Positions 1,362 through 61,120 of a DNA stretch of 64,000 nt are shown here, piece by piece. Location: IMG/VR virus record IMGVR_UViG_3300050821_013430, positions 124,001-188,000 of that record, one strand, 5' to 3'. Positions within the stretch are counted from its first letter, which is position 1, and the number at the start of each line of letters is the position of its first letter. The translations under genes and the position numbers were made by a program. The notes beneath the pieces are model-generated. The model ran no database searches and was not told where the DNA came from. It saw nothing but the letters and a program-made list of their open reading frames with translations.

Positions 1362-3242
1362 TTAGGCTGGCGGAGCCGCTGGTGGCGGGCCACCTGCTGG
1401 AGGAGGGGGTGGGGGAGGTCCCCCTGCGCCACCTGCTGGGGGTGGTGAGGGCAGAGGGGGTGGCGATCCACTACCACCTAGGCCTGGGAGACCGCTCATC
1501 GGAGGCATTCCTCCTCCCGCAGCCTCTTCTCCGGCTCCCGTTTCGCCTGGAACTGGTGCTTCCTTGGCATCCTGAGTATCGGGCTCTGGAATTTCATTAT
1601 CCTCACCATCACCCAAAGAACGAAGAGCGTTAAGCGGCATTTTCTCGAGAGAGGCCGCTTCTTTAGTTTCAATAGCGGCCTGAATCATTTCTTTGCGTTT
1701 CTTACGAACTTCATCTTCCCATTCCAAACCCATCGCACGATAGAGAGAGTGAAGGGAGGCTCGTTTTTCTTCACCCTTGCCGCTAGTCAGTGTGACTAAA
1801 TTCTGGATATAATCAGCGGTATCGAAGAGAGACATATGATTCCAATCAATTTCTGGAACAATCAGTCTCTTTTTCTTATCCTTGTATTCGTAAAAACCTT
1901 GTATCTTAGATATGGGGGCGAAGATTTTGTTTCGTAACCAAGAACCTAACATATTTCGGAATTGCATATACCGCTGACGAAGAACATCCAAAGCAACGCC
2001 ACCGTTGGCATAAGTGGTATCAGCTCCGCCATCCATCAATACTTGTGGAACCTGCAAACCAACATAGATTTCTTTCATCAATTGAGTAATATCGCCAGAA
2101 ATATCGTAGATGCCCTGATTCCATCCAACACGCTCAACCGCAACGCCTTCGTGAGTAAAAATCTTGAAATCCTGATCGTACTGAGCCGCTTCAAATACAT
2201 TGCGCCAAGCTTCCAAATCTAAATGAGTTGGCTTATAATCAGCCGATCCTATCTTTACGATAGTCATTGGATTGATCATATTTACGGCTTGTACATACTT
2301 AGCTTCTCTTAATTGATCGAACAACATTAGCTGTCTAAAAATACAAACTGGCAAACCCGTTCCACGAATTTCATATGGGCTAATTTTACGCGCTAAGTGA
2401 TGAATATGGAAATTATCCAATACAATATTTTCTCCGCGTTTTACCGCATCAATAATATATTGATTGAGCTGCTTTTTTTGTTCTAAATCTGCTGGACGAT
2501 TTGAATTAATGATACGTTTCAAATTTTCGTCAGGCCGCATCATAATAATAGGCTCATTGGCTACTACAGTGCGTTTTACAATCATATAGTCTGGATTTTC
2601 AATTAATAACCGACTCCACATACCTTTAGTATTATCTAATTCACCATAAACAAAGGCTTCACCTAAAAGAAAATATTCCTGAGCAATTTGAGTACAAATA
2701 TTGATCAAATCCAAATTTTCAATCATTTCATCAAAGAATTGTTGGATTTCTGCATTTTTACATTTGATATTTAACTTACTAATTGGGTAAGTACTGTGCA
2801 AATTAATCGCATTATGCACGAAAGGGTTTAGCGCATAGAAACTACGACACCAAGCATTGATGGTGACACGATCTCTCGGTAAATTAAGATTGCTGTTCAA
2901 CCATAGTGGTGAATAAACTTGTGGGACTTGTTTGACTGAATCGCCCATCCCACCCCTATAATTAGAGCCCGGACCGACGCCCCCATCTAAAAACTGCCCT
3001 CCGCTTAACACCTGGGCATGCTTAGCTATACGCACCGAAGCCACTACATTAGCGTTAGCAGTCTCACCAGATGCTAAATTGGTGGAACTACCATCCCGAT
3101 AAATTCCGGATGCTACATCATCGGCCAACATATTGCGACGTTCCTCAGAAACTGAGGAAGCCACCAGAGCACTAATCTGAGGCGGTTGCGAGGATTTGGC
3201 TTCCAAATATTTCTCTGAATTTGACTTGACGAACTTATTCAA
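1362..3242 (-). CDS. Phage portal protein
   Basis: 626 aa, directly downstream of the terminase. Portal-like segments (NPFVHNAINLHSTYP, YFLLGEAFVY, HLARKISPYEIRGT, VGLQVPQVLM). Acidic and Pro/Gly-rich C-tail. Confidence 0.8.
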   Translation of the reverse strand: MNKFVKSNSEKYLEAKSSQPPQISALVASSVSEERRNMLADDVASGIYRDGSSTNLASGETANANVVASVRIAKHAQVLSGGQFLDGGVGPGSNYRGGMGDSVKQVPQVYSPLWLNSNLNLPRDRVTINAWCRSFYALNPFVHNAINLHSTYPISKLNIKCKNAEIQQFFDEMIENLDLINICTQIAQEYFLLGEAFVYGELDNTKGMWSRLLIENPDYMIVKRTVVANEPIIMMRPDENLKRIINSNRPADLEQKKQLNQYIIDAVKRGENIVLDNFHIHHLARKISPYEIRGTGLPVCIFRQLMLFDQLREAKYVQAVNMINPMTIVKIGSADYKPTHLDLEAWRNVFEAAQYDQDFKIFTHEGVAVERVGWNQGIYDISGDITQLMKEIYVGLQVPQVLMDGGADTTYANGGVALDVLRQRYMQFRNMLGSWLRNKIFAPISKIQGFYEYKDKKKRLIVPEIDWNHMSLFDTADYIQNLVTLTSGKGEEKRASLHSLYRAMGLEWEDEVRKKRKEMIQAAIETKEAASLEKMPLNALRSLGDGEDNEIPEPDTQDAKEAPVPGETGAGEEAAGGGMPPMSGLPGLGGSGSPPPLPSPPPAGGAGGPPPPPPPAGGPPPAAPPA

Positions 3243-54108: not shown

Positions 54109-54485
54109 ACGACAAAAATACAACACTCAAACTTTTAGCCATTGTCAAAAAACAACAAGCGATGATTGAAAGACTAGCCAATTGGTCAGGGGCGGTTAGT
54201 CCTGCCTCGGTATTACAAGCAAATACTCCTAATAGTGCTGGCAGTATGGCTGGGGCACCAGAAAGCGCTAAACAGCGCATCCAAGCCATGATTATTCCAA
54301 TGAAGTTGGAAATTATTGATTTGGAATGGGGCACACTTCCAAAAATAGTACTGCAAGGCCAAAAAGTAGATTATCCAAGACCGCATGCTGATCAAGATTT
54401 GGTTGCTCGCTTGAAACCACGCCTTTCTACAATAATGGATGACTATCAAAAACACGGTATTGTGCTTAGCATTCAACTTGTTTAG
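54105..54485 (+). CDS. Hypothetical protein with N-terminal module shared with 52964
   Basis: MNDKNTTLKLLAIVKKQQAMIERLAN; AGGAG SD. Confidence 0.6.
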   Translation: MNDKNTTLKLLAIVKKQQAMIERLANWSGAVSPASVLQANTPNSAGSMAGAPESAKQRIQAMIIPMKLEIIDLEWGTLPKIVLQGQKVDYPRPHADQDLVARLKPRLSTIMDDYQKHGIVLSIQLV

Positions 54486-54510
54486 CTTCAAATTCGAACG
54501 GCATTTAATA

Positions 54511-55197
54511 ATGAAAGATGTTTGTACAATCTATATTATACAAAATAATTTCAATGATAAAGTTTATATTGGCCAAACTTGGCAACCCGTCAATAAGCGT
54601 TTCAATGCACATCTAAAAGATAAAAAAGGCTCCTGTCGTAAGTTATTCAATGCTTTCAATAAATACGATCGCGCGAATTTTTATATCGCGGTATTAGCGG
54701 TTTGCAATACACAATCAGAAGCAGATTGGCTGGAAACCTGCTGGATAGATATTTTCGATAGTCGTATAAATGGATACAATCTTAGAAGTGGCGGATCACG
54801 CGGCAAACATTCAGAAGAAAGCAAACAAAAGATGAGCACCGATCGAAAAGGCAAAATGCTTGGAGAAATACATCCAATGTATGGCAAGCATCATACCGAG
54901 GAAACTAAAGCCAGAATGTCAAAGTCCAAAAGAGGAAAGGTTCAATCCGAAAAAAGCAATCATAAAAGATCAGAAGCATTGAAGGGACGATCGATTCTTA
55001 CGGAAATTCAAGTTCAGCAAATCCGGGAAAGCCACATGCAAATGAAAAGTTATCGTACATTAGCTAAAGAATTTGATATATCTATAACTACAGTGGAACG
55101 CGTGGTAAAAAAGAAAAGTCCATATAATAAACCGCTTACTGATGAAGCAAGCATAGCAAGACAAAATAATAGCCAGTCTAAACTTTTTGGTACTTAG
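54511..55197 (+). CDS. GIY-YIG homing endonuclease with NUMOD3 repeats and HTH
   Basis: IYIIQNNFNDKVYIGQT, GYNL, HSEESK/HTEETK; start at MKDVCT. Paralogue of 14030-14866. Confidence 0.88.
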   Translation: MKDVCTIYIIQNNFNDKVYIGQTWQPVNKRFNAHLKDKKGSCRKLFNAFNKYDRANFYIAVLAVCNTQSEADWLETCWIDIFDSRINGYNLRSGGSRGKHSEESKQKMSTDRKGKMLGEIHPMYGKHHTEETKARMSKSKRGKVQSEKSNHKRSEALKGRSILTEIQVQQIRESHMQMKSYRTLAKEFDISITTVERVVKKKSPYNKPLTDEASIARQNNSQSKLFGT

Positions 55198-55720: not shown

Positions 55721-56185
55721 TCAAGAATGTGGCAAGATCAATTTTTCAACATCAATTCCAAAACTTTTCAACAAGGATACATCTAATGCCCAATGAAAGT
55801 GGCTGCGTTGGCTCCAAATCTGAAACTCGTGGTGAATATAATCCTTGGCCTCTTGTTCCGGTATCTCATTGACTTTCATTAGATGGTGTAGGGCGTCCTC
55901 ATATTTCCCGGCGGTCATCGCATAACCCATATGTTTAGTGAGATGGCAGGCGGGACATAAGGCCATCATGCATTTTAGTTTTTGGATATGTCGATGATCA
56001 TCATATGACCAAACTTCGTGGCAATGCAAGGCAACATTGGTAGTGCCGCAAACTTCGCAAGCGTTGTAGGCGTTGCTATAAATTTGCTTTCTAAGTATGT
56101 CCCATTGAGTTTGAGAAAGGATAGCACGAAGACTCTTGCCCCACGCATTTAAAGGGACGAGTTCAAGTATTAGGCGCATCGACAT
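55721..56185 (-). CDS. HNH endonuclease-like protein
   Basis: WDILRK...CEVC...LHCHEVW...LCPACH..KH; AGGAGG SD. Confidence 0.75.
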   Translation of the reverse strand: MSMRLILELVPLNAWGKSLRAILSQTQWDILRKQIYSNAYNACEVCGTTNVALHCHEVWSYDDHRHIQKLKCMMALCPACHLTKHMGYAMTAGKYEDALHHLMKVNEIPEQEAKDYIHHEFQIWSQRSHFHWALDVSLLKSFGIDVEKLILPHS

Positions 56186-56255
56186 CCTCCTACGAATGAA
56201 ATTTAGTGCTTCATTGAAAACAATACCGCATTAGCCCTAATTGGGCAAGAAAAAG

Positions 56256-56332
56256 TGGTGTCCCCGGCGAATTAACAGCTCGCATCATTTTCGTTTTAGG
56301 GACGAACGCTCTTGTTTTTGAGCTACGGGGAC
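56256..56332 (-). tRNA. Atypical tRNA with CUA anticodon (putative amber suppressor)
   Basis: GTCCCCG TA GCTC-AAAAACAA-GAGC G TTCGT-CCCTAAA-ACGAA AATGAT GCGAG-CTGTTAA-TTCGC CGGGGAC A CCA. Full cloverleaf with encoded CCA; anticodon CTA at 56297-56299; C33, no D-loop GG, no TTC. Confidence 0.75.
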
Positions 56333-56399: not shown

Positions 56400-56732
56400 T
56401 CATTTGATCCATTCATCTGGCACAATCGCGTGGGATTGACACCATTCATCGAGGTCTTGGTTTTCCATCCACATAAATACACCATAATCTTCACCACCAA
56501 AATACTCATCGATATGAATATCGATATCCTCTAATTTTGCTCCTTTGAGAAACTCAACAACGATATGGGCAGCCCAAATAGCATAGGCTTTGCGCCCATC
56601 TGTAAGTTTTTGGTAGAGGTTTTTAGCGACAGTATGTACATCGCCTAATAAATCTTCTGGATCGACAAACCATCCTTTGGATGTATAGAGATACTTGCCA
56701 GTTTTCCAATTATTGATTACATATTGGGCCAT
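56400..56732 (-). CDS. Hypothetical protein
   Basis: 110-aa ORF directly after the PTH2-like gene. Confidence 0.55.
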   Translation of the reverse strand: MAQYVINNWKTGKYLYTSKGWFVDPEDLLGDVHTVAKNLYQKLTDGRKAYAIWAAHIVVEFLKGAKLEDIDIHIDEYFGGEDYGVFMWMENQDLDEWCQSHAIVPDEWIK

Positions 56733-57068
56733 TTATTTTCCTTTCAATGCCAGTTTCAGATGTTGGCATAATCTTTTGCTTTTCTCACCGGGCGCCAATG
56801 CTATCGCAGTGAGTTCGTCTTCCAAATCCGGCTCTCGAAATAATGTTCGTTCGATGTTTTGTTCTCTGGCTTGTCGAGCAAGCTCCTGCAAGTCAAATTT
56901 ACTTTCAGTTCGCAACACCACAATATAGTTTGAGGTCGTTAGCCAATGCTTTGCACTCTCAGGATGTTCGATCATAAAAGTGGTAGCGGCGTGGCAGGCC
57001 TGAGCGATTTGTAGTCCTGGTGCGAGATCGCCCCGCACCACGATGTAGAGTTTATCAATCTATGACAT
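56733..57068 (-). CDS. PTH2-family (peptidyl-tRNA hydrolase II-like) protein with in-frame UAG at codon 3
   Basis: ATG TCA TAG ATT GAT AAA CTC TAC ATC GTG GTG CGG = MS*IDKLYIVVRGDL; then AQACHA, IVVL, FREPDL..ELTAIAL. The ATG overlaps the upstream TAA (TAATG). Confidence 0.8.
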
Positions 57069-58135: not shown

Positions 58136-58154
58136 TGTCTTTCTCTGTAAATTT

Positions 58155-58506
58155 TGGAGCTGCCGAGCTTCGATGCCCGGGTCTCCCACACTCAATCCTA
58201 AAACTCATTCACAAACTTAGCAAGTGATATTAGCATTTGCACTAATCGAAGAGTTTTAGGTTCTTCGCGACCGATCTACTGTTGATTTCATTTGAGGCCC
58301 CGTAGCCAAACATCAAACTATTTTTCGTGGGTTAGCGTTCCTTTGACTACTAAAAATACCTCATCTCGGAACGTATGGGGCCCTTAGGCTGCCATAGCGA
58401 ATACTGTTTCGTCAGCGTTCAAACGTTGATCACTTTTTGACGAGGAGCAATCGTCCCCGGTTTGCGTTTTAGTTTCTCCTGCGAGATCGAAATCCAATTC
58501 AGCCCC
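58155..58506 (-). ncRNA. ssrA: tmRNA, tag (A)ADETVFAMAA
   Basis: 5' GGGGCTGAATTGGATTTCGA and 3' CAGCTCC-A give an acceptor stem with G3:U70. Tag frame GCT GAC GAA ACA GTA TTC GCT ATG GCA GCC TAA at 58416-58384. Length 352 nt; CCA not encoded. Confidence 0.92.
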
Positions 58507-59740: not shown

Positions 59741-60505
59741 TCAGTGTTTTTTGATGATATCTTGGAGAAATTCCTTTTCCGAAGTGAAAATCGGAACATC
59801 GGTATTTAGAGCCCAACGCTCTTTTACAATATCCTCGCCGTTGTAATTGATCGTCTCCGGGCGTCGGTAGCACACTACGCCTCTCCTAAATTCGACCGGA
59901 TACTCATAGAAATCAATTCCCGCTTCTTCTTTCAATAGTTTGATCTTCTCTTCCAAGGAAGTATCCATCAGCATCTCTTCGATTTCGTGTTTCCTATACT
60001 TCTTGATCAATTCATAGAAACAAGCCAGCCTAACTGCAATTTGGTGGGCTCGTTGCTGATGATATACCATAACATTTACTGCCTCAGTAAGATTAGGGAC
60101 GGTAAAAATCTTGCTCAAAAAGATGGGGTCGCCCGACAAATTTACTTCCAATTCTGCTGCAGCATCATTGAAATGGAGCGTGGCAAGAGAAGAAGCGGCA
60201 GAAATAATTTTGGAAACGGAATTATCATACCAAGGCTGAGTATCCAAAGTTTGATCGTTTCTTACAATTATTGTAATTTCATCGTTGAACGAATAAGCAA
60301 AAACTGCTCCCTCAATTTCTTGAACGAGATCGGCCATCGTGGCATAGAGGCATTGTCCAAGTTCCAAAGAAAATGGTTTTGGTAGCAAGGAAGTGATCTT
60401 GCTGAAATTTCTTCCGTTGAGATTGATGATCAGCGGCACTCGGGGCATCAGTCTCGGGTCGCAAATATCCTCATAACTTGTAATTCTGGCTTTCAGTGGC
60501 TGCAT
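59741..60505 (-). CDS. Thg1-like protein (tRNA-His guanylyltransferase / 3'-5' polymerase family)
   Basis: YE...P.II.LNGRNFS.T...KPF, YSFNDEI, SKIISAASS, FRRGV. Confidence 0.85.
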   Translation of the reverse strand: MQPLKARITSYEDICDPRLMPRVPLIINLNGRNFSKITSLLPKPFSLELGQCLYATMADLVQEIEGAVFAYSFNDEITIIVRNDQTLDTQPWYDNSVSKIISAASSLATLHFNDAAAELEVNLSGDPIFLSKIFTVPNLTEAVNVMVYHQQRAHQIAVRLACFYELIKKYRKHEIEEMLMDTSLEEKIKLLKEEAGIDFYEYPVEFRRGVVCYRRPETINYNGEDIVKERWALNTDVPIFTSEKEFLQDIIKKH

Positions 60506-61120
60506 TTATTTTGTCTTTATTTGTCGTACTATATCGAGAAGAACGGTTCTAATGTTGCCACCAACCTTACTATACAGCGTGGCATTTATCGCACCGTCAG
60601 GAATTGCCGGAGATTGAATTTGATTTGTCAAAATGCTAACGGTTTGCATTCGATTAGCGGTAGGAACGGGAGCGGCGAAATCATAACCATTATTTTTGAT
60701 CATCCTACGAAAAACTAATTTTCCAAGATTGGCCAAGGCACTAACCAATGGTGTATAAGCGCTCGTGTCAATGCCGAAAGACTGATCGTAAAGTCTTGCA
60801 AAATCCAGTTTGCCATTAGAAGTAATGTAGATGGCCTGATTGAGCGCATTGACTAATTGACGAATGAAATTGAGATTGTTGGCACCCCATCCTAAAACCA
60901 AGGTCGGGGAGACGGTAGCAGGATCAAAAGGTCGTGGGGAGCCAGAAACAACGGTCGGAGTAGTTGATGTAGCGGTAGAAGCGGGCGAGGACGGAGCAGC
61001 GGGAGCGGCGGGAGTTGCTGCTTGTGCCAGTCGAAATAATGTCCTAAGTCTGCCGTTCATATAAGAAATGTCGGAAAAACGCCTTCGTCTTTTCGGATAT
61101 AGGGACTGGTATGAAAACAC
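60506..61120 (-). CDS. Hypothetical virion-like protein
   Basis: RLAQ followed by an Ala/Pro/Thr linker; true start probably MNGRLR. Confidence 0.5.
   Translation of the reverse strand: MFSYQSLYPKRRRRFSDISYMNGRLRTLFRLAQAATPAAPAAPSSPASTATSTTPTVVSGSPRPFDPATVSPTLVLGWGANNLNFIRQLVNALNQAIYITSNGKLDFARLYDQSFGIDTSAYTPLVSALANLGKLVFRRMIKNNGYDFAAPVPTANRMQTVSILTNQIQSPAIPDGAINATLYSKVGGNIRTVLLDIVRQIKTK

What the first reader, a model, noticed from the sequence alone, without database searches (positions are those of the whole stretch)
56256..56332. Non-canonical CUA-anticodon tRNA in a standard-code phage
Complete cloverleaf with a perfect 7-bp acceptor stem (GUCCCCG/CGGGGAC), A73 and encoded CCA. The anticodon loop is CCCUAAA, with C33 instead of the invariant U33. 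The D-loop lacks GG and the T-loop (CUGUUAA) lacks UUC, so both partners of the elbow interaction are changed while all stems are intact, which argues against random decay. It is not tRNA-Pyl (A73, 5-bp anticodon stem, 8-nt D-loop). It could be a deliberately weak or context-specific amber suppressor, or a decoy for tRNA-targeting defences.
Basis: partly seen in the sequence, partly recalled or inferred. Interest (0 to 1): 0.72.

Follow-up and report, generated by a model that had tools for sequence, protein, structure and literature searches.

The report
Atypical amber-suppressor tRNA in a megaphage
A 77-nt gene in a 473-kb soil phage is a real, evolutionarily maintained tRNA that carries the stop-codon-reading anticodon CUA but lacks the sequence signatures standard tRNA finders rely on, and it belongs to a previously unannotated family of such tRNAs in related giant phages.

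Summary
On the minus strand of window 56256..56332 lies a perfect cloverleaf with anticodon loop CCCUAAA (C33, CUA), no G18G19, no T54-Psi55-C56, A73 and an encoded CCA. ARAGORN and Rfam both miss it. It is not decay. Two relatives whose neighbouring protein is 82-84% identical carry the same RNA. All 21 stem pairs are kept there, through five compensatory double changes and one wobble change. A covariance model then found ten more members in related 100-480-kb phages, all with CUA. Most have a non-canonical T loop and seven were missed by ARAGORN. Across ten members, 14 of 21 pairs covary. The D-loop/T-loop contact 19:56 appears as G:C, C:G (this phage) or U:A, so the elbow looks rebuilt rather than lost. 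The gene occupies the slot where relatives hold canonical CUA tRNAs, in a module with a Thg1-like protein, a tmRNA and a PTH2 peptidyl-tRNA hydrolase. The phage uses the standard code and shows no TAG-specific read-through. TAG ends 17.6% of its long ORFs, against 3-5% in relatives with canonical U33 suppressors. Best reading: a host-charged, probably weak amber suppressor. Charging and decoding are untested. It is a new variant of a known kind.

The parts
56256..56332 (-). Atypical tRNA gene, anticodon CUA (77 nt, CCA encoded). Acceptor 5' strand 56326..56332. D arm 56308..56323. Anticodon arm 56290..56306. T arm 56267..56283. Acceptor 3' strand 56260..56266. A73 at 56259. CCA at 56256..56258.
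   Evidence: Sequence. MFE cloverleaf, z -4.0. Orthologues with compensatory changes. Covariance models R1 and R2 score it 104 and 84 bits.
56297..56299 (-). Anticodon CUA (positions 34-36) inside the 7-nt loop CCCUAAA. Position 33 is C, not the near-invariant U.
   Evidence: Sequence. The loop is invariant in window, L112 and L114. CUA is kept in the family members.
56234..56246 (-). Small conserved hairpin (GCCC-AAUUA-GGGC) 9 nt downstream of the CCA. Its role is unknown; it may be a processing or termination signal.
   Evidence: It is conserved in L112. In L114 it reads GUCC-GAUUA-GGAC, a compensatory change.
55721..56185 (-). Downstream neighbour: a 154-aa Cys/His-rich protein (CxxC...HCHE.W...CPxCH). 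It has no Pfam hit, and one source names a homologue McrA/HNH-like. It served as the anchor gene for finding orthologous loci.
56400..56732 (-). Upstream neighbour: a 110-aa ORF of unknown function, found only in this phage and in L112/L113.
56733..57041 (-). PTH2-type peptidyl-tRNA hydrolase.
   Evidence: Pfam PF01981, E 1.8e-10. Homologues sit upstream of the CUA tRNAs in relatives.
58152..58506 (-). Phage tmRNA. The acceptor has G3:U70, the tag reads ADETVFAMAA by alignment to the model, and CCA is not encoded.
   Evidence: Rfam RF00023, 71 bits, E 1e-25. ARAGORN misses it. Contigs from two soil metatranscriptomes cover only this part of a 5-kb stretch.
59741..60505 (-). Thg1-like protein (3'-5' nucleotidyl-transferase family that acts on tRNA 5' ends).
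   Evidence: Pfam PF04446, E 1.8e-18, plus PF14413. The same gene is present in L112.

Best explanation
This is a functional, selectively maintained tRNA gene with anticodon CUA. It is the most derived member of a family of structurally atypical amber-suppressor-type tRNAs, called 'type D' here, carried by a clade of soil megaphages inside a translation-rescue module (Thg1-like protein, tmRNA, PTH2, CUA tRNAs).

Inferred mechanism:
1. It is transcribed with the upstream PTH2/110-aa genes. In two relatives it starts only 5-10 nt after the upstream ORF's stop codon.
2. It is cut out by host RNase P and 3' processing; the CCA is encoded.
3. It folds into an L shape whose elbow is held by a swapped 19:56 pair (C19:G56 instead of G19:C56).
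4. It is charged by a host aminoacyl-tRNA synthetase, because none of the four synthetase families searched for is present in the phage. By analogy with E. coli CUA tRNAs the amino acid would be Lys or Gln, but this is unknown.
5. It reads UAG in competition with release factor 1.

Because U33 is replaced by C33 and the T loop is non-canonical, I expect low suppression efficiency. That fits a phage that still ends about 18% of its genes with TAG.

Shown: the structure, its conservation and covariation, the conserved CUA, the synteny with canonical CUA tRNAs, the standard code, and the TAG-usage contrast. Inferred: expression, processing, charging, decoding, and the 'weak' efficiency.
For: (1) The cloverleaf is the MFE structure, z -4.0.

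(2) Orthologues in L112/L113 and L114, whose neighbouring protein is 84% and 82% identical, keep 21/21 stem pairs. Five pairs have double compensatory changes (four in the anticodon stem plus 49:65) and one has a wobble change. The loop CCCUAAA is identical in all three.

(3) Models R1/R2 find further members that ARAGORN missed in L010, L012, L013, L021, L028, L119 and L120 (73-86 bits for the family, against <=53 bits for ordinary tRNAs). L143, L151 and L146 were added later.
- Across 10 members, 197/210 stem cells pair and 14/21 pairs show compensatory changes.
- RNAalifold independently recovers the acceptor, D and T stems, with 10/15 pairs changed on both sides.

(4) All members have CUA followed by AA.

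(5) Synteny. In relatives the order is PTH2 - ... - CUA tRNA(s) - homologue of the 154-aa protein, often with a tmRNA upstream and tRNA-Arg(CCU) downstream.

(6) The tertiary pair 19:56 covaries. Most members have G19 with C56; window, L112 and L114 have C with G56; L146 has U19 with A56.

(7) The genome uses the standard code and shows no TAG-specific in-frame stops.

(8) TAG as a share of the stops that end ORFs of >=150 aa:
- G000: 17.6%
- G002, G003 and G004, which have canonical U33 CUA tRNAs: 4.9%, 4.6% and 3.3%
- G001, whose only CUA tRNA also has C33: 9.6%
Fisher's test for G000 against G002-4 gives OR 4.7, p 1e-13.

(9) No LysRS/AspRS-class, GlnRS/GluRS-class or PheRS/PylRS-class synthetase and no RF-1-domain protein is found in the genome.
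Against: - There is no direct evidence of expression, processing or charging. No RNA run was listed for the intergenic stretch, and the two metatranscriptomes laid down show only the tmRNA. A 77-nt RNA would hardly appear in such contigs anyway.
- C33, the missing T54-Psi55-C56 and the G:U or U:U pair at 53:61 could impair ribosome or EF-Tu use enough that decoding is not its role.
- The phage does not avoid TAG and has no gene that visibly needs suppression, so the benefit of a suppressor is unclear.
- The discriminator base differs among close orthologues (A, U, G). That is odd for a tRNA with one fixed synthetase.
- The TAG-usage correlation rests on five genomes and on ORF proxies rather than curated genes.
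Confidence: 0.6

Rival explanations
1. A tRNA-shaped RNA that is kept by selection but no longer decodes. Examples would be a decoy or sponge for a host tRNA-directed nuclease, modification enzyme or defence sensor, a regulator of the neighbouring translation-rescue genes, or a substrate for a non-ribosomal aminoacyl-transfer reaction.
For: - It lacks the features most translation factors and processing enzymes contact (U33, G18G19, T54-Psi55-C56), and general tRNA models do not see it.
- This subclade has lost the canonical CUA paralogues that relatives keep.
- It uses TAG freely as a stop.
- The discriminator base varies among orthologues.
Against: - CUA-A37-A38 is kept in every family member over deep divergence. 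An ordinary host would not be expected to carry a CUA tRNA for a decoy to mimic.
- The RNA is positionally orthologous to canonical CUA tRNAs.
- The acceptor stem, the discriminator-plus-CCA layout and the apparently preserved elbow pair all point to a chargeable L-shaped tRNA.
Confidence: 0.25
2. A decaying relic of a suppressor tRNA that happens still to fold.
For: The canonical loop signatures are missing. The phage neither needs TAG decoding nor avoids TAG stops.
Against: Three diverged copies keep 21/21 pairs through five double compensatory changes and no disruption, with invariant anticodon and near-invariant T loops. Neutral decay would break stems.
Confidence: 0.04
3. A pyrrolysine-type tRNA (tRNA-Pyl) served by a dedicated synthetase.
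For: It has a CUA anticodon, lacks G18G19 and T54-Psi55-C56, and has G1:C72. ARAGORN labels CUA tRNAs in the relatives 'tRNA-Pyl', simply by anticodon.
Against: It has a 5-bp anticodon stem, a 6-nt variable region, two bases (U8 A9) between the acceptor and D stems, an 8-nt D loop and A73. tRNA-Pyl has 6 bp, 3 nt, 1 base, 5 nt and G73 (PMC1851642). No PylRS/PheRS-class catalytic domain is found in the genome.
Confidence: 0.01

Closest known systems
[quoted passage not shown]
   Same: It is a phage-borne tRNA with a stop-codon anticodon in a large phage. It occurs in a standard-code genome, as has been described for relatives of recoded phages. It sits beside other translation genes.
   Different: Known examples were found with tRNAscan-SE or ARAGORN and so are canonical. 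This family has a non-canonical T loop and, in this subclade, also C33 and a G-free D loop, which makes it invisible to those tools. No recoded (code 15) member was seen among the five related genomes I examined.
tRNA-Pyl
   Same: CUA anticodon, absence of G18G19 and T54-Psi55-C56, and G1:C72.
   Different: Stem and loop lengths, the number of linker bases and the discriminator all differ (see the membership test). No cognate synthetase gene is present.
Non-proteinogenic tRNA-Gly of staphylococci and metazoan mitochondrial tRNAs (from my own knowledge, not tested here)
   Same: These are working tRNAs in which the D-loop GG and the T-loop T-Psi-C are replaced. They show that the canonical elbow sequence is not required for charging.
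   Different: Those tRNAs read sense codons, or feed cell-wall synthesis, in cellular or organellar systems. They are not phage suppressors.
Eukaryotic initiator tRNAs with C33 (cited in PMC11122139)
   Same: C in place of the near-invariant U33.
   Different: Those are initiators used in the P site. Here C33 sits in an elongator-type CUA tRNA. It recurs in three otherwise canonical phage CUA tRNAs (L027, L108, L109).

Membership tests
Canonical bacterial-type tRNA (Rfam RF00005 / ARAGORN model) | Cloverleaf with 7-bp acceptor, 4-bp D, 5-bp anticodon and 5-bp T stems and a 7-nt anticodon loop | tested here: met
   The MFE fold equals the cloverleaf. 21/21 pairs form.
Canonical bacterial-type tRNA (Rfam RF00005 / ARAGORN model) | Score at or above the model's threshold | tested here: not met
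   No Rfam match, even at E<=10 on 131 nt. ARAGORN finds nothing at default settings, and does not call this locus down to -ps85.
Canonical bacterial-type tRNA (Rfam RF00005 / ARAGORN model) | U33, G18G19, T54-Psi55-C56 and G53:C61 | tested here: not met
   The sequence has C33, the D loop AAAAACAA, the T loop CUGUUAA and G53:U61.
Canonical bacterial-type tRNA (Rfam RF00005 / ARAGORN model) | U8, A14, A21, a purine at 37, and a discriminator followed by CCA | tested here: met
   Read directly from the sequence.
Phage amber-suppressor tRNA | CUA at positions 34-36, conserved in orthologues | tested here: met
   All 13 family members carry CUA. L119 has an expanded or ambiguous loop.
Phage amber-suppressor tRNA | Positional orthology with recognised CUA tRNAs of related phages | tested here: met
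   The order PTH2 - CUA tRNA(s) - 154-aa homologue is seen in L004/L016, L010-L028, G001, G002, L117 and L119.
Phage amber-suppressor tRNA | Aminoacylation and read-through of UAG | not testable with these tools
   This needs charging and reporter assays. No RNA run holding the locus was listed.
Stop-codon-recoded phage (genetic code 15) | In-frame TAG in conserved genes, and low coding density under code 11 | tested here: not met
   ORFs cover 92% of the genome under code 11. No TAG-specific in-frame stops appear against relatives. TAG ends 83 of 471 long ORFs.
tRNA-Pyl (features from PMC1851642) | [quoted passage not shown] | tested here: not met
   The values here are 5 bp, 6 nt, two bases (U8 A9) and 8 nt.
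tRNA-Pyl (features from PMC1851642) | G73 and G1:C72 identity elements, with a cognate PylRS | tested here: not met
   G1:C72 is present, but the discriminator is A73, and U or G in orthologues. No PF01409-class synthetase is found in the genome.
tRNA-Pyl (features from PMC1851642) | Absence of G18G19 and T54-Psi55-C56, with a CUA anticodon | tested here: met
   Sequence.
'Type D' atypical CUA tRNA family (defined here) | UA-GCUC-AAA..A-GAGC D arm, CUA-AA loop, 4-bp T stem closed by U:U or G:U with a non-T-Psi-C loop, and R2 score well above ordinary tRNAs | tested here: met
   The window scores 83.8 bits with R2. The ten seed members score 73-86 bits, against <=53 bits for other tRNAs. L143 and L151 score 80-83 and L146 scores 65. 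The model was built from the ten, so their own scores are partly circular. The independent support is the covariation.

The most novel reading that the evidence does not exclude
In this subclade the CUA tRNA has been remodelled on purpose: C33, a swapped C19:G56 elbow pair and a new T loop. This would make it orthogonal to host factors. It might escape a host T-loop- or elbow-directed tRNase, modification enzyme or defence sensor, or be used only by a phage-modified translation apparatus. The phage would then control when, or at which UAG codons, termination is overridden, together with its own tmRNA and PTH2. That would be a natural 'orthogonal' suppressor system in a standard-code virus.
Probability: 0.15. 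Interest if true: 0.85.

Novelty: new variant of a known kind. Interest (0 to 1): 0.62.

Why it matters
- Detection bias. A whole family of conserved CUA tRNAs in giant soil phages escapes ARAGORN and Rfam. Surveys of phage suppressor tRNAs and stop-codon recoding that rely on canonical tRNA finders may therefore undercount them.
- tRNA structure. The family offers a natural experiment in tRNA architecture. The 19:56 elbow pair occurs in three Watson-Crick versions, and C33 is tolerated in several independent CUA tRNAs.
- A testable link. Relatives with canonical U33 suppressors almost abandon TAG as a stop. The phage with only the atypical C33 version does not. This makes the relation between suppressor strength and stop-codon usage directly testable, and that relation is a proposed first step towards genetic-code change in phages.
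- Synthetic biology. Naturally diverged suppressor tRNAs of this kind are also candidate parts for genetic-code expansion.

Tried and rejected
- ARAGORN on the window and the genome, including relaxed thresholds, does not call the locus.
- Rfam at gathering and E-value thresholds gives no tRNA hit.
- Megablast and blastn against deposited phages give no match.
- Exact-pattern scans of viral and metagenome collections for this variant's T arm returned only the same phage (L002, L116) and one chance hit in GC-rich coding DNA (L115).
- Sequencing runs: DNA runs hold identical sequence, so they give no variation. RNA contigs cover only the tmRNA, and no RNA run was listed for the intergenic stretch.
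- Origin by similarity: the candidate is about equally similar (50-54 of 77 nt) to relatives' tRNA-Arg(CCU), which has the same GUCCCCG acceptor, and to several CUA types. Simple identity does not settle its origin. The covariance model and the shared T arm place it with type D.
- TAG read-through: no TAG excess was found among in-frame stops inside tblastn alignments to G001 or among same-frame ORF pairs bridged by a homologue (TAA 12, TGA 7, TAG 5). TAG has no special downstream context and no longer extensions than the other stops.
- C33 enrichment in CUA tRNAs is not significant (2/22 against 5/153, p 0.21).
- Phage-encoded synthetases or release factor: none were found for PF00152, PF00749, PF01409 or PF00472.
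- The promoter/terminator scan gave nothing specific next to the gene.
- MAFFT and CM alignments mis-register the 3' strand of the anticodon stem. Pair counts were therefore made on a scripted structural parse instead of with the count of structure pairs.

Full report
**1. The observation**

The window is bases 124001-188000 of a 472,749-bp IMG/VR virus record. CheckV rates the record 100% complete, and its G+C content is 45%.

The reverse complement of window 56256..56332 reads as follows:
- a 7-bp acceptor stem GUCCCCG/CGGGGAC
- U8 A9
- D stem GCUC/GAGC around the loop AAAAACAA
- G26
- anticodon stem UUCGU/ACGAA around the loop CCCUAAA
- a 6-nt variable region
- T stem GCGAG/UUCGC around the loop CUGUUAA
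- A73 and CCA

RNAfold returns exactly this cloverleaf as the minimum-free-energy structure: -25.3 kcal/mol, z = -4.0, with none of 200 shuffles as stable. The feature lies on the minus strand, the same strand as all its neighbours.

Standard detectors do not see it:
- ARAGORN reports no tRNA in the window and six elsewhere in the genome. It does not call this locus down to a relaxed threshold of -ps85.
- Rfam gives no match, even at E<=10 on a 131-nt slice.

**2. Genetic code of the phage**

Stop-to-stop ORFs of at least 100 aa cover 92% of the genome under code 11. No 4-kb window other than the first falls below 80%. TAG ends 83 of 471 ORFs of at least 150 aa.

I looked for TAG read-through in three ways:
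- tblastn between this genome and a 433-kb relative (G001) shows no excess of TAG among in-alignment stops.
- Among same-frame ORF pairs bridged by one homologue, there are 12 TAA, 7 TGA and 5 TAG junctions.
- The bases after TAG and the distance to the next in-frame stop are unremarkable.

The phage therefore uses the standard code, and I found no gene that needs amber suppression.

**3. Surroundings**

The minus strand carries, in this order:
- a Thg1-like protein at 59741..60505 (PF04446)
- a tmRNA at 58152..58506 (Rfam, 71 bits)
- a PTH2 peptidyl-tRNA hydrolase at 56733..57041 (PF01981)
- a 110-aa ORF
- the tRNA-like gene
- a 154-aa Cys/His-rich protein at 55721..56185

Two soil metatranscriptomes contain contigs that cover only the tmRNA within a 5-kb stretch. 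No RNA run was listed for the intergenic stretch that holds the candidate. A 77-nt RNA would hardly be assembled in such data, so this says nothing either way.

**4. Relatives**

I used the 154-aa protein as the anchor gene. About twenty 40-49%-identical homologues in 20-480-kb viral contigs, most over 120 kb, have one or two ARAGORN-recognised CUA tRNAs just upstream. They usually also have tRNA-Arg(CCU) downstream. PTH2 and a tmRNA lie further upstream. The candidate thus sits in the slot that holds amber-suppressor tRNAs in related phages.

A protein search found two closer relatives, 84% and 82% identical. Their contigs, L112/L113 and L114, carry the same atypical RNA in the same gap.

In a structural parse all three copies form 21 of 21 stem pairs. 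Between them, four of the five anticodon-stem pairs and pair 49:65 show changes on both sides. Pair 5:68 changes C:G to U:G, and nothing is broken. The loop CCCUAAA is identical in all three and the T loop differs at one base. This excludes neutral decay.

**5. A family**

A covariance model built from these three copies (R1) hit tRNA-like genes that ARAGORN had missed in L010, L012, L013, L021, L028, L119 and L120. Those hits scored better than most of the ARAGORN-called CUA tRNAs.

A second model (R2) separates the ten members (73-86 bits) from every other tRNA in 40 loci (<=53 bits). A pattern scan followed by R2 added L143, L151 and an intermediate form, L146.

The members share these features:
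- UA-GCUC-AAA..A-GAGC as the D arm
- CUA followed by AA in the anticodon loop
- a four-pair T stem closed by U:U or G:U
- T loops such as GUCAGAA, GUCGGGA, GGCAGGA or, in this subclade, CUG(U/G)UAA; L146 differs, with a five-pair T stem and the loop UUAGAAU

Across ten members, 197 of 210 stem cells pair and 14 of 21 pairs show compensatory double changes. RNAalifold independently recovers the acceptor, D and T stems, with 10 of 15 pairs changed on both sides. Within this genome the candidate is the only strong match (which covered 464 of 473 kb).

**6. What is special in this subclade**

Relatives have U33, G18G19 (or A18G19) and C56. Window, L112 and L114 have C33, a D loop with C but no G, and G56. 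L146 has G18 U19 with U55 A56.

The tertiary pair 19:56 therefore appears as G:C, C:G and U:A. I read this as preservation of the elbow by compensatory change. This is an inference from two independent switches, not a demonstrated contact.

C33 is not unique to this RNA. It also occurs in otherwise canonical CUA tRNAs of L027/G001, L108 and L109 and in 5 of 153 sense tRNAs of these phages. The difference from CUA tRNAs is not significant. U33 is otherwise near-invariant, with C33 known in some eukaryotic initiator tRNAs (PMC11122139).

**7. Function**

Three observations indicate that the selected property is reading UAG: the conserved CUA-AA, the chargeable acceptor end, and the orthology to canonical suppressors.

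None of the four synthetase and release-factor families searched for (PF00152, PF00749, PF01409, PF00472) is present in the genome. Host enzymes would therefore have to charge the tRNA. From my own knowledge of E. coli amber suppressors, Lys or Gln is the usual outcome for CUA tRNAs that lack other strong identity marks. The variable discriminator (A, U or G) leaves this open.

TAG as a share of the stop codons ending long ORFs:

| Genome | CUA tRNAs | TAG share |
|---|---|---|
| G004 | canonical, U33 | 3.3% |
| G003 | canonical, U33 | 4.6% |
| G002 | canonical, U33 | 4.9% |
| G001 | one canonical, C33 | 9.6% |
| G000 (this phage) | only the atypical C33 tRNA | 17.6% |

- The overall TAG trinucleotide share is similar in all five genomes.
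- Fisher's test for G000 against G002-4 gives an odds ratio of 4.7, p = 1e-13.
- In the L112 locus, 3 of 19 genes end in TAG.

This pattern fits strong suppression in the relatives and weak suppression here. It is a correlation over five genomes, based on ORF proxies rather than curated genes.

Borges et al. describe suppressor tRNAs in standard-code relatives of recoded phages, and depletion of the stop codon concerned, as steps towards recoding (10.1101/2021.08.26.457843). The relatives here fit that picture.

**8. Rival explanations**

- A non-decoding tRNA mimic remains possible (about 0.25).
- A decaying relic is nearly excluded by the covariation.
- tRNA-Pyl fails four of its architectural criteria and has no synthetase (PMC1851642).

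**9. Verdict**

This is a real gene: a new, structurally atypical variant of phage suppressor tRNA, and a member of a family that standard tools miss. Expression, charging and decoding remain to be shown.

Noticed in passing
window 58152..58506 (-): A phage tmRNA (Rfam, 71 bits) that ARAGORN misses. Its acceptor has G3:U70, its tag reads ADETVFAMAA, and its 3' end is ...CUCCAAAA with no encoded CCA. Contigs of two soil metatranscriptomes cover only this part of a 5-kb stretch, which suggests a stable, expressed RNA. Relatives G001 and G002 have tmRNAs with the tags ANDNAFVPMAQAA and ANDNAFAMAA.
   Followed up: partly
window 59741..60505 (-) and 60506..61120 (-): A Thg1-like protein sits next to a 204-aa ORF in the same frame, separated by a single TAA. 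In G001 and G002 one continuous ORF spans both parts, with S or P at that position. So the gene is either split here or fused there.
   Followed up: no
window 54439..55197 (+): A GIY-YIG/NUMOD3 homing-endonuclease gene lies about 0.5 kb downstream of the 154-aa gene. That is the region where relatives carry tRNA-Arg(CCU), and no such tRNA is found in this genome. The relatives' tRNA-Arg(CCU) has the same acceptor 5' strand (GUCCCCG) and the same ACCA end as the candidate.
   Followed up: partly
window 56234..56246 (-): A 4-bp hairpin 9 nt after the CCA is conserved in L112 and shows a compensatory change in L114 (GCCC/GGGC becomes GUCC/GGAC). Its function is unknown.
   Followed up: no
G000 genome 275261..275503 (outside the window; L168:7261-7503): Three adjacent tRNA-like genes. 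Only tRNA-Leu(CAA) passes ARAGORN's default threshold; 'Ser(UGA)' and 'Arg(CCG)' appear only at relaxed thresholds. The phage may hold more atypical tRNAs.
   Followed up: no
G002 (L123:10073-10149) and G002-G004 as a whole: G002 also carries an ochre-type tRNA (anticodon UUA) besides two CUA tRNAs. G002, G003 and G004 end only 3-5% of long ORFs with TAG although they use the standard code.
   Followed up: partly
L119:1099-1173: This family member has an extra A in the anticodon loop. It can be read either as a 9-nt loop CUCUAAAAA or as a 7-nt loop UCUAAAA with C33 and anticodon UAA.
   Followed up: no
L155 (Tepidisphaeraceae MAG) 2179..2253 and L156 (Verrucomicrobiae MAG) 2383..2456: These bacterial metagenome-assembled genomes hold canonical CUA tRNAs with the same D arm (GCUC-AAAGG.A-GAGC). 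They could be prophage-borne, or a hint about the host range of this phage group.
   Followed up: no
G000 genome 246992, 226906, 290968, 435959 (outside the window): At these positions two long same-frame ORFs are separated by TAA, where the relative G002 has a sense codon in one continuous alignment. They were not examined further. Split genes and adjacent genes are the simple explanations.
   Followed up: no
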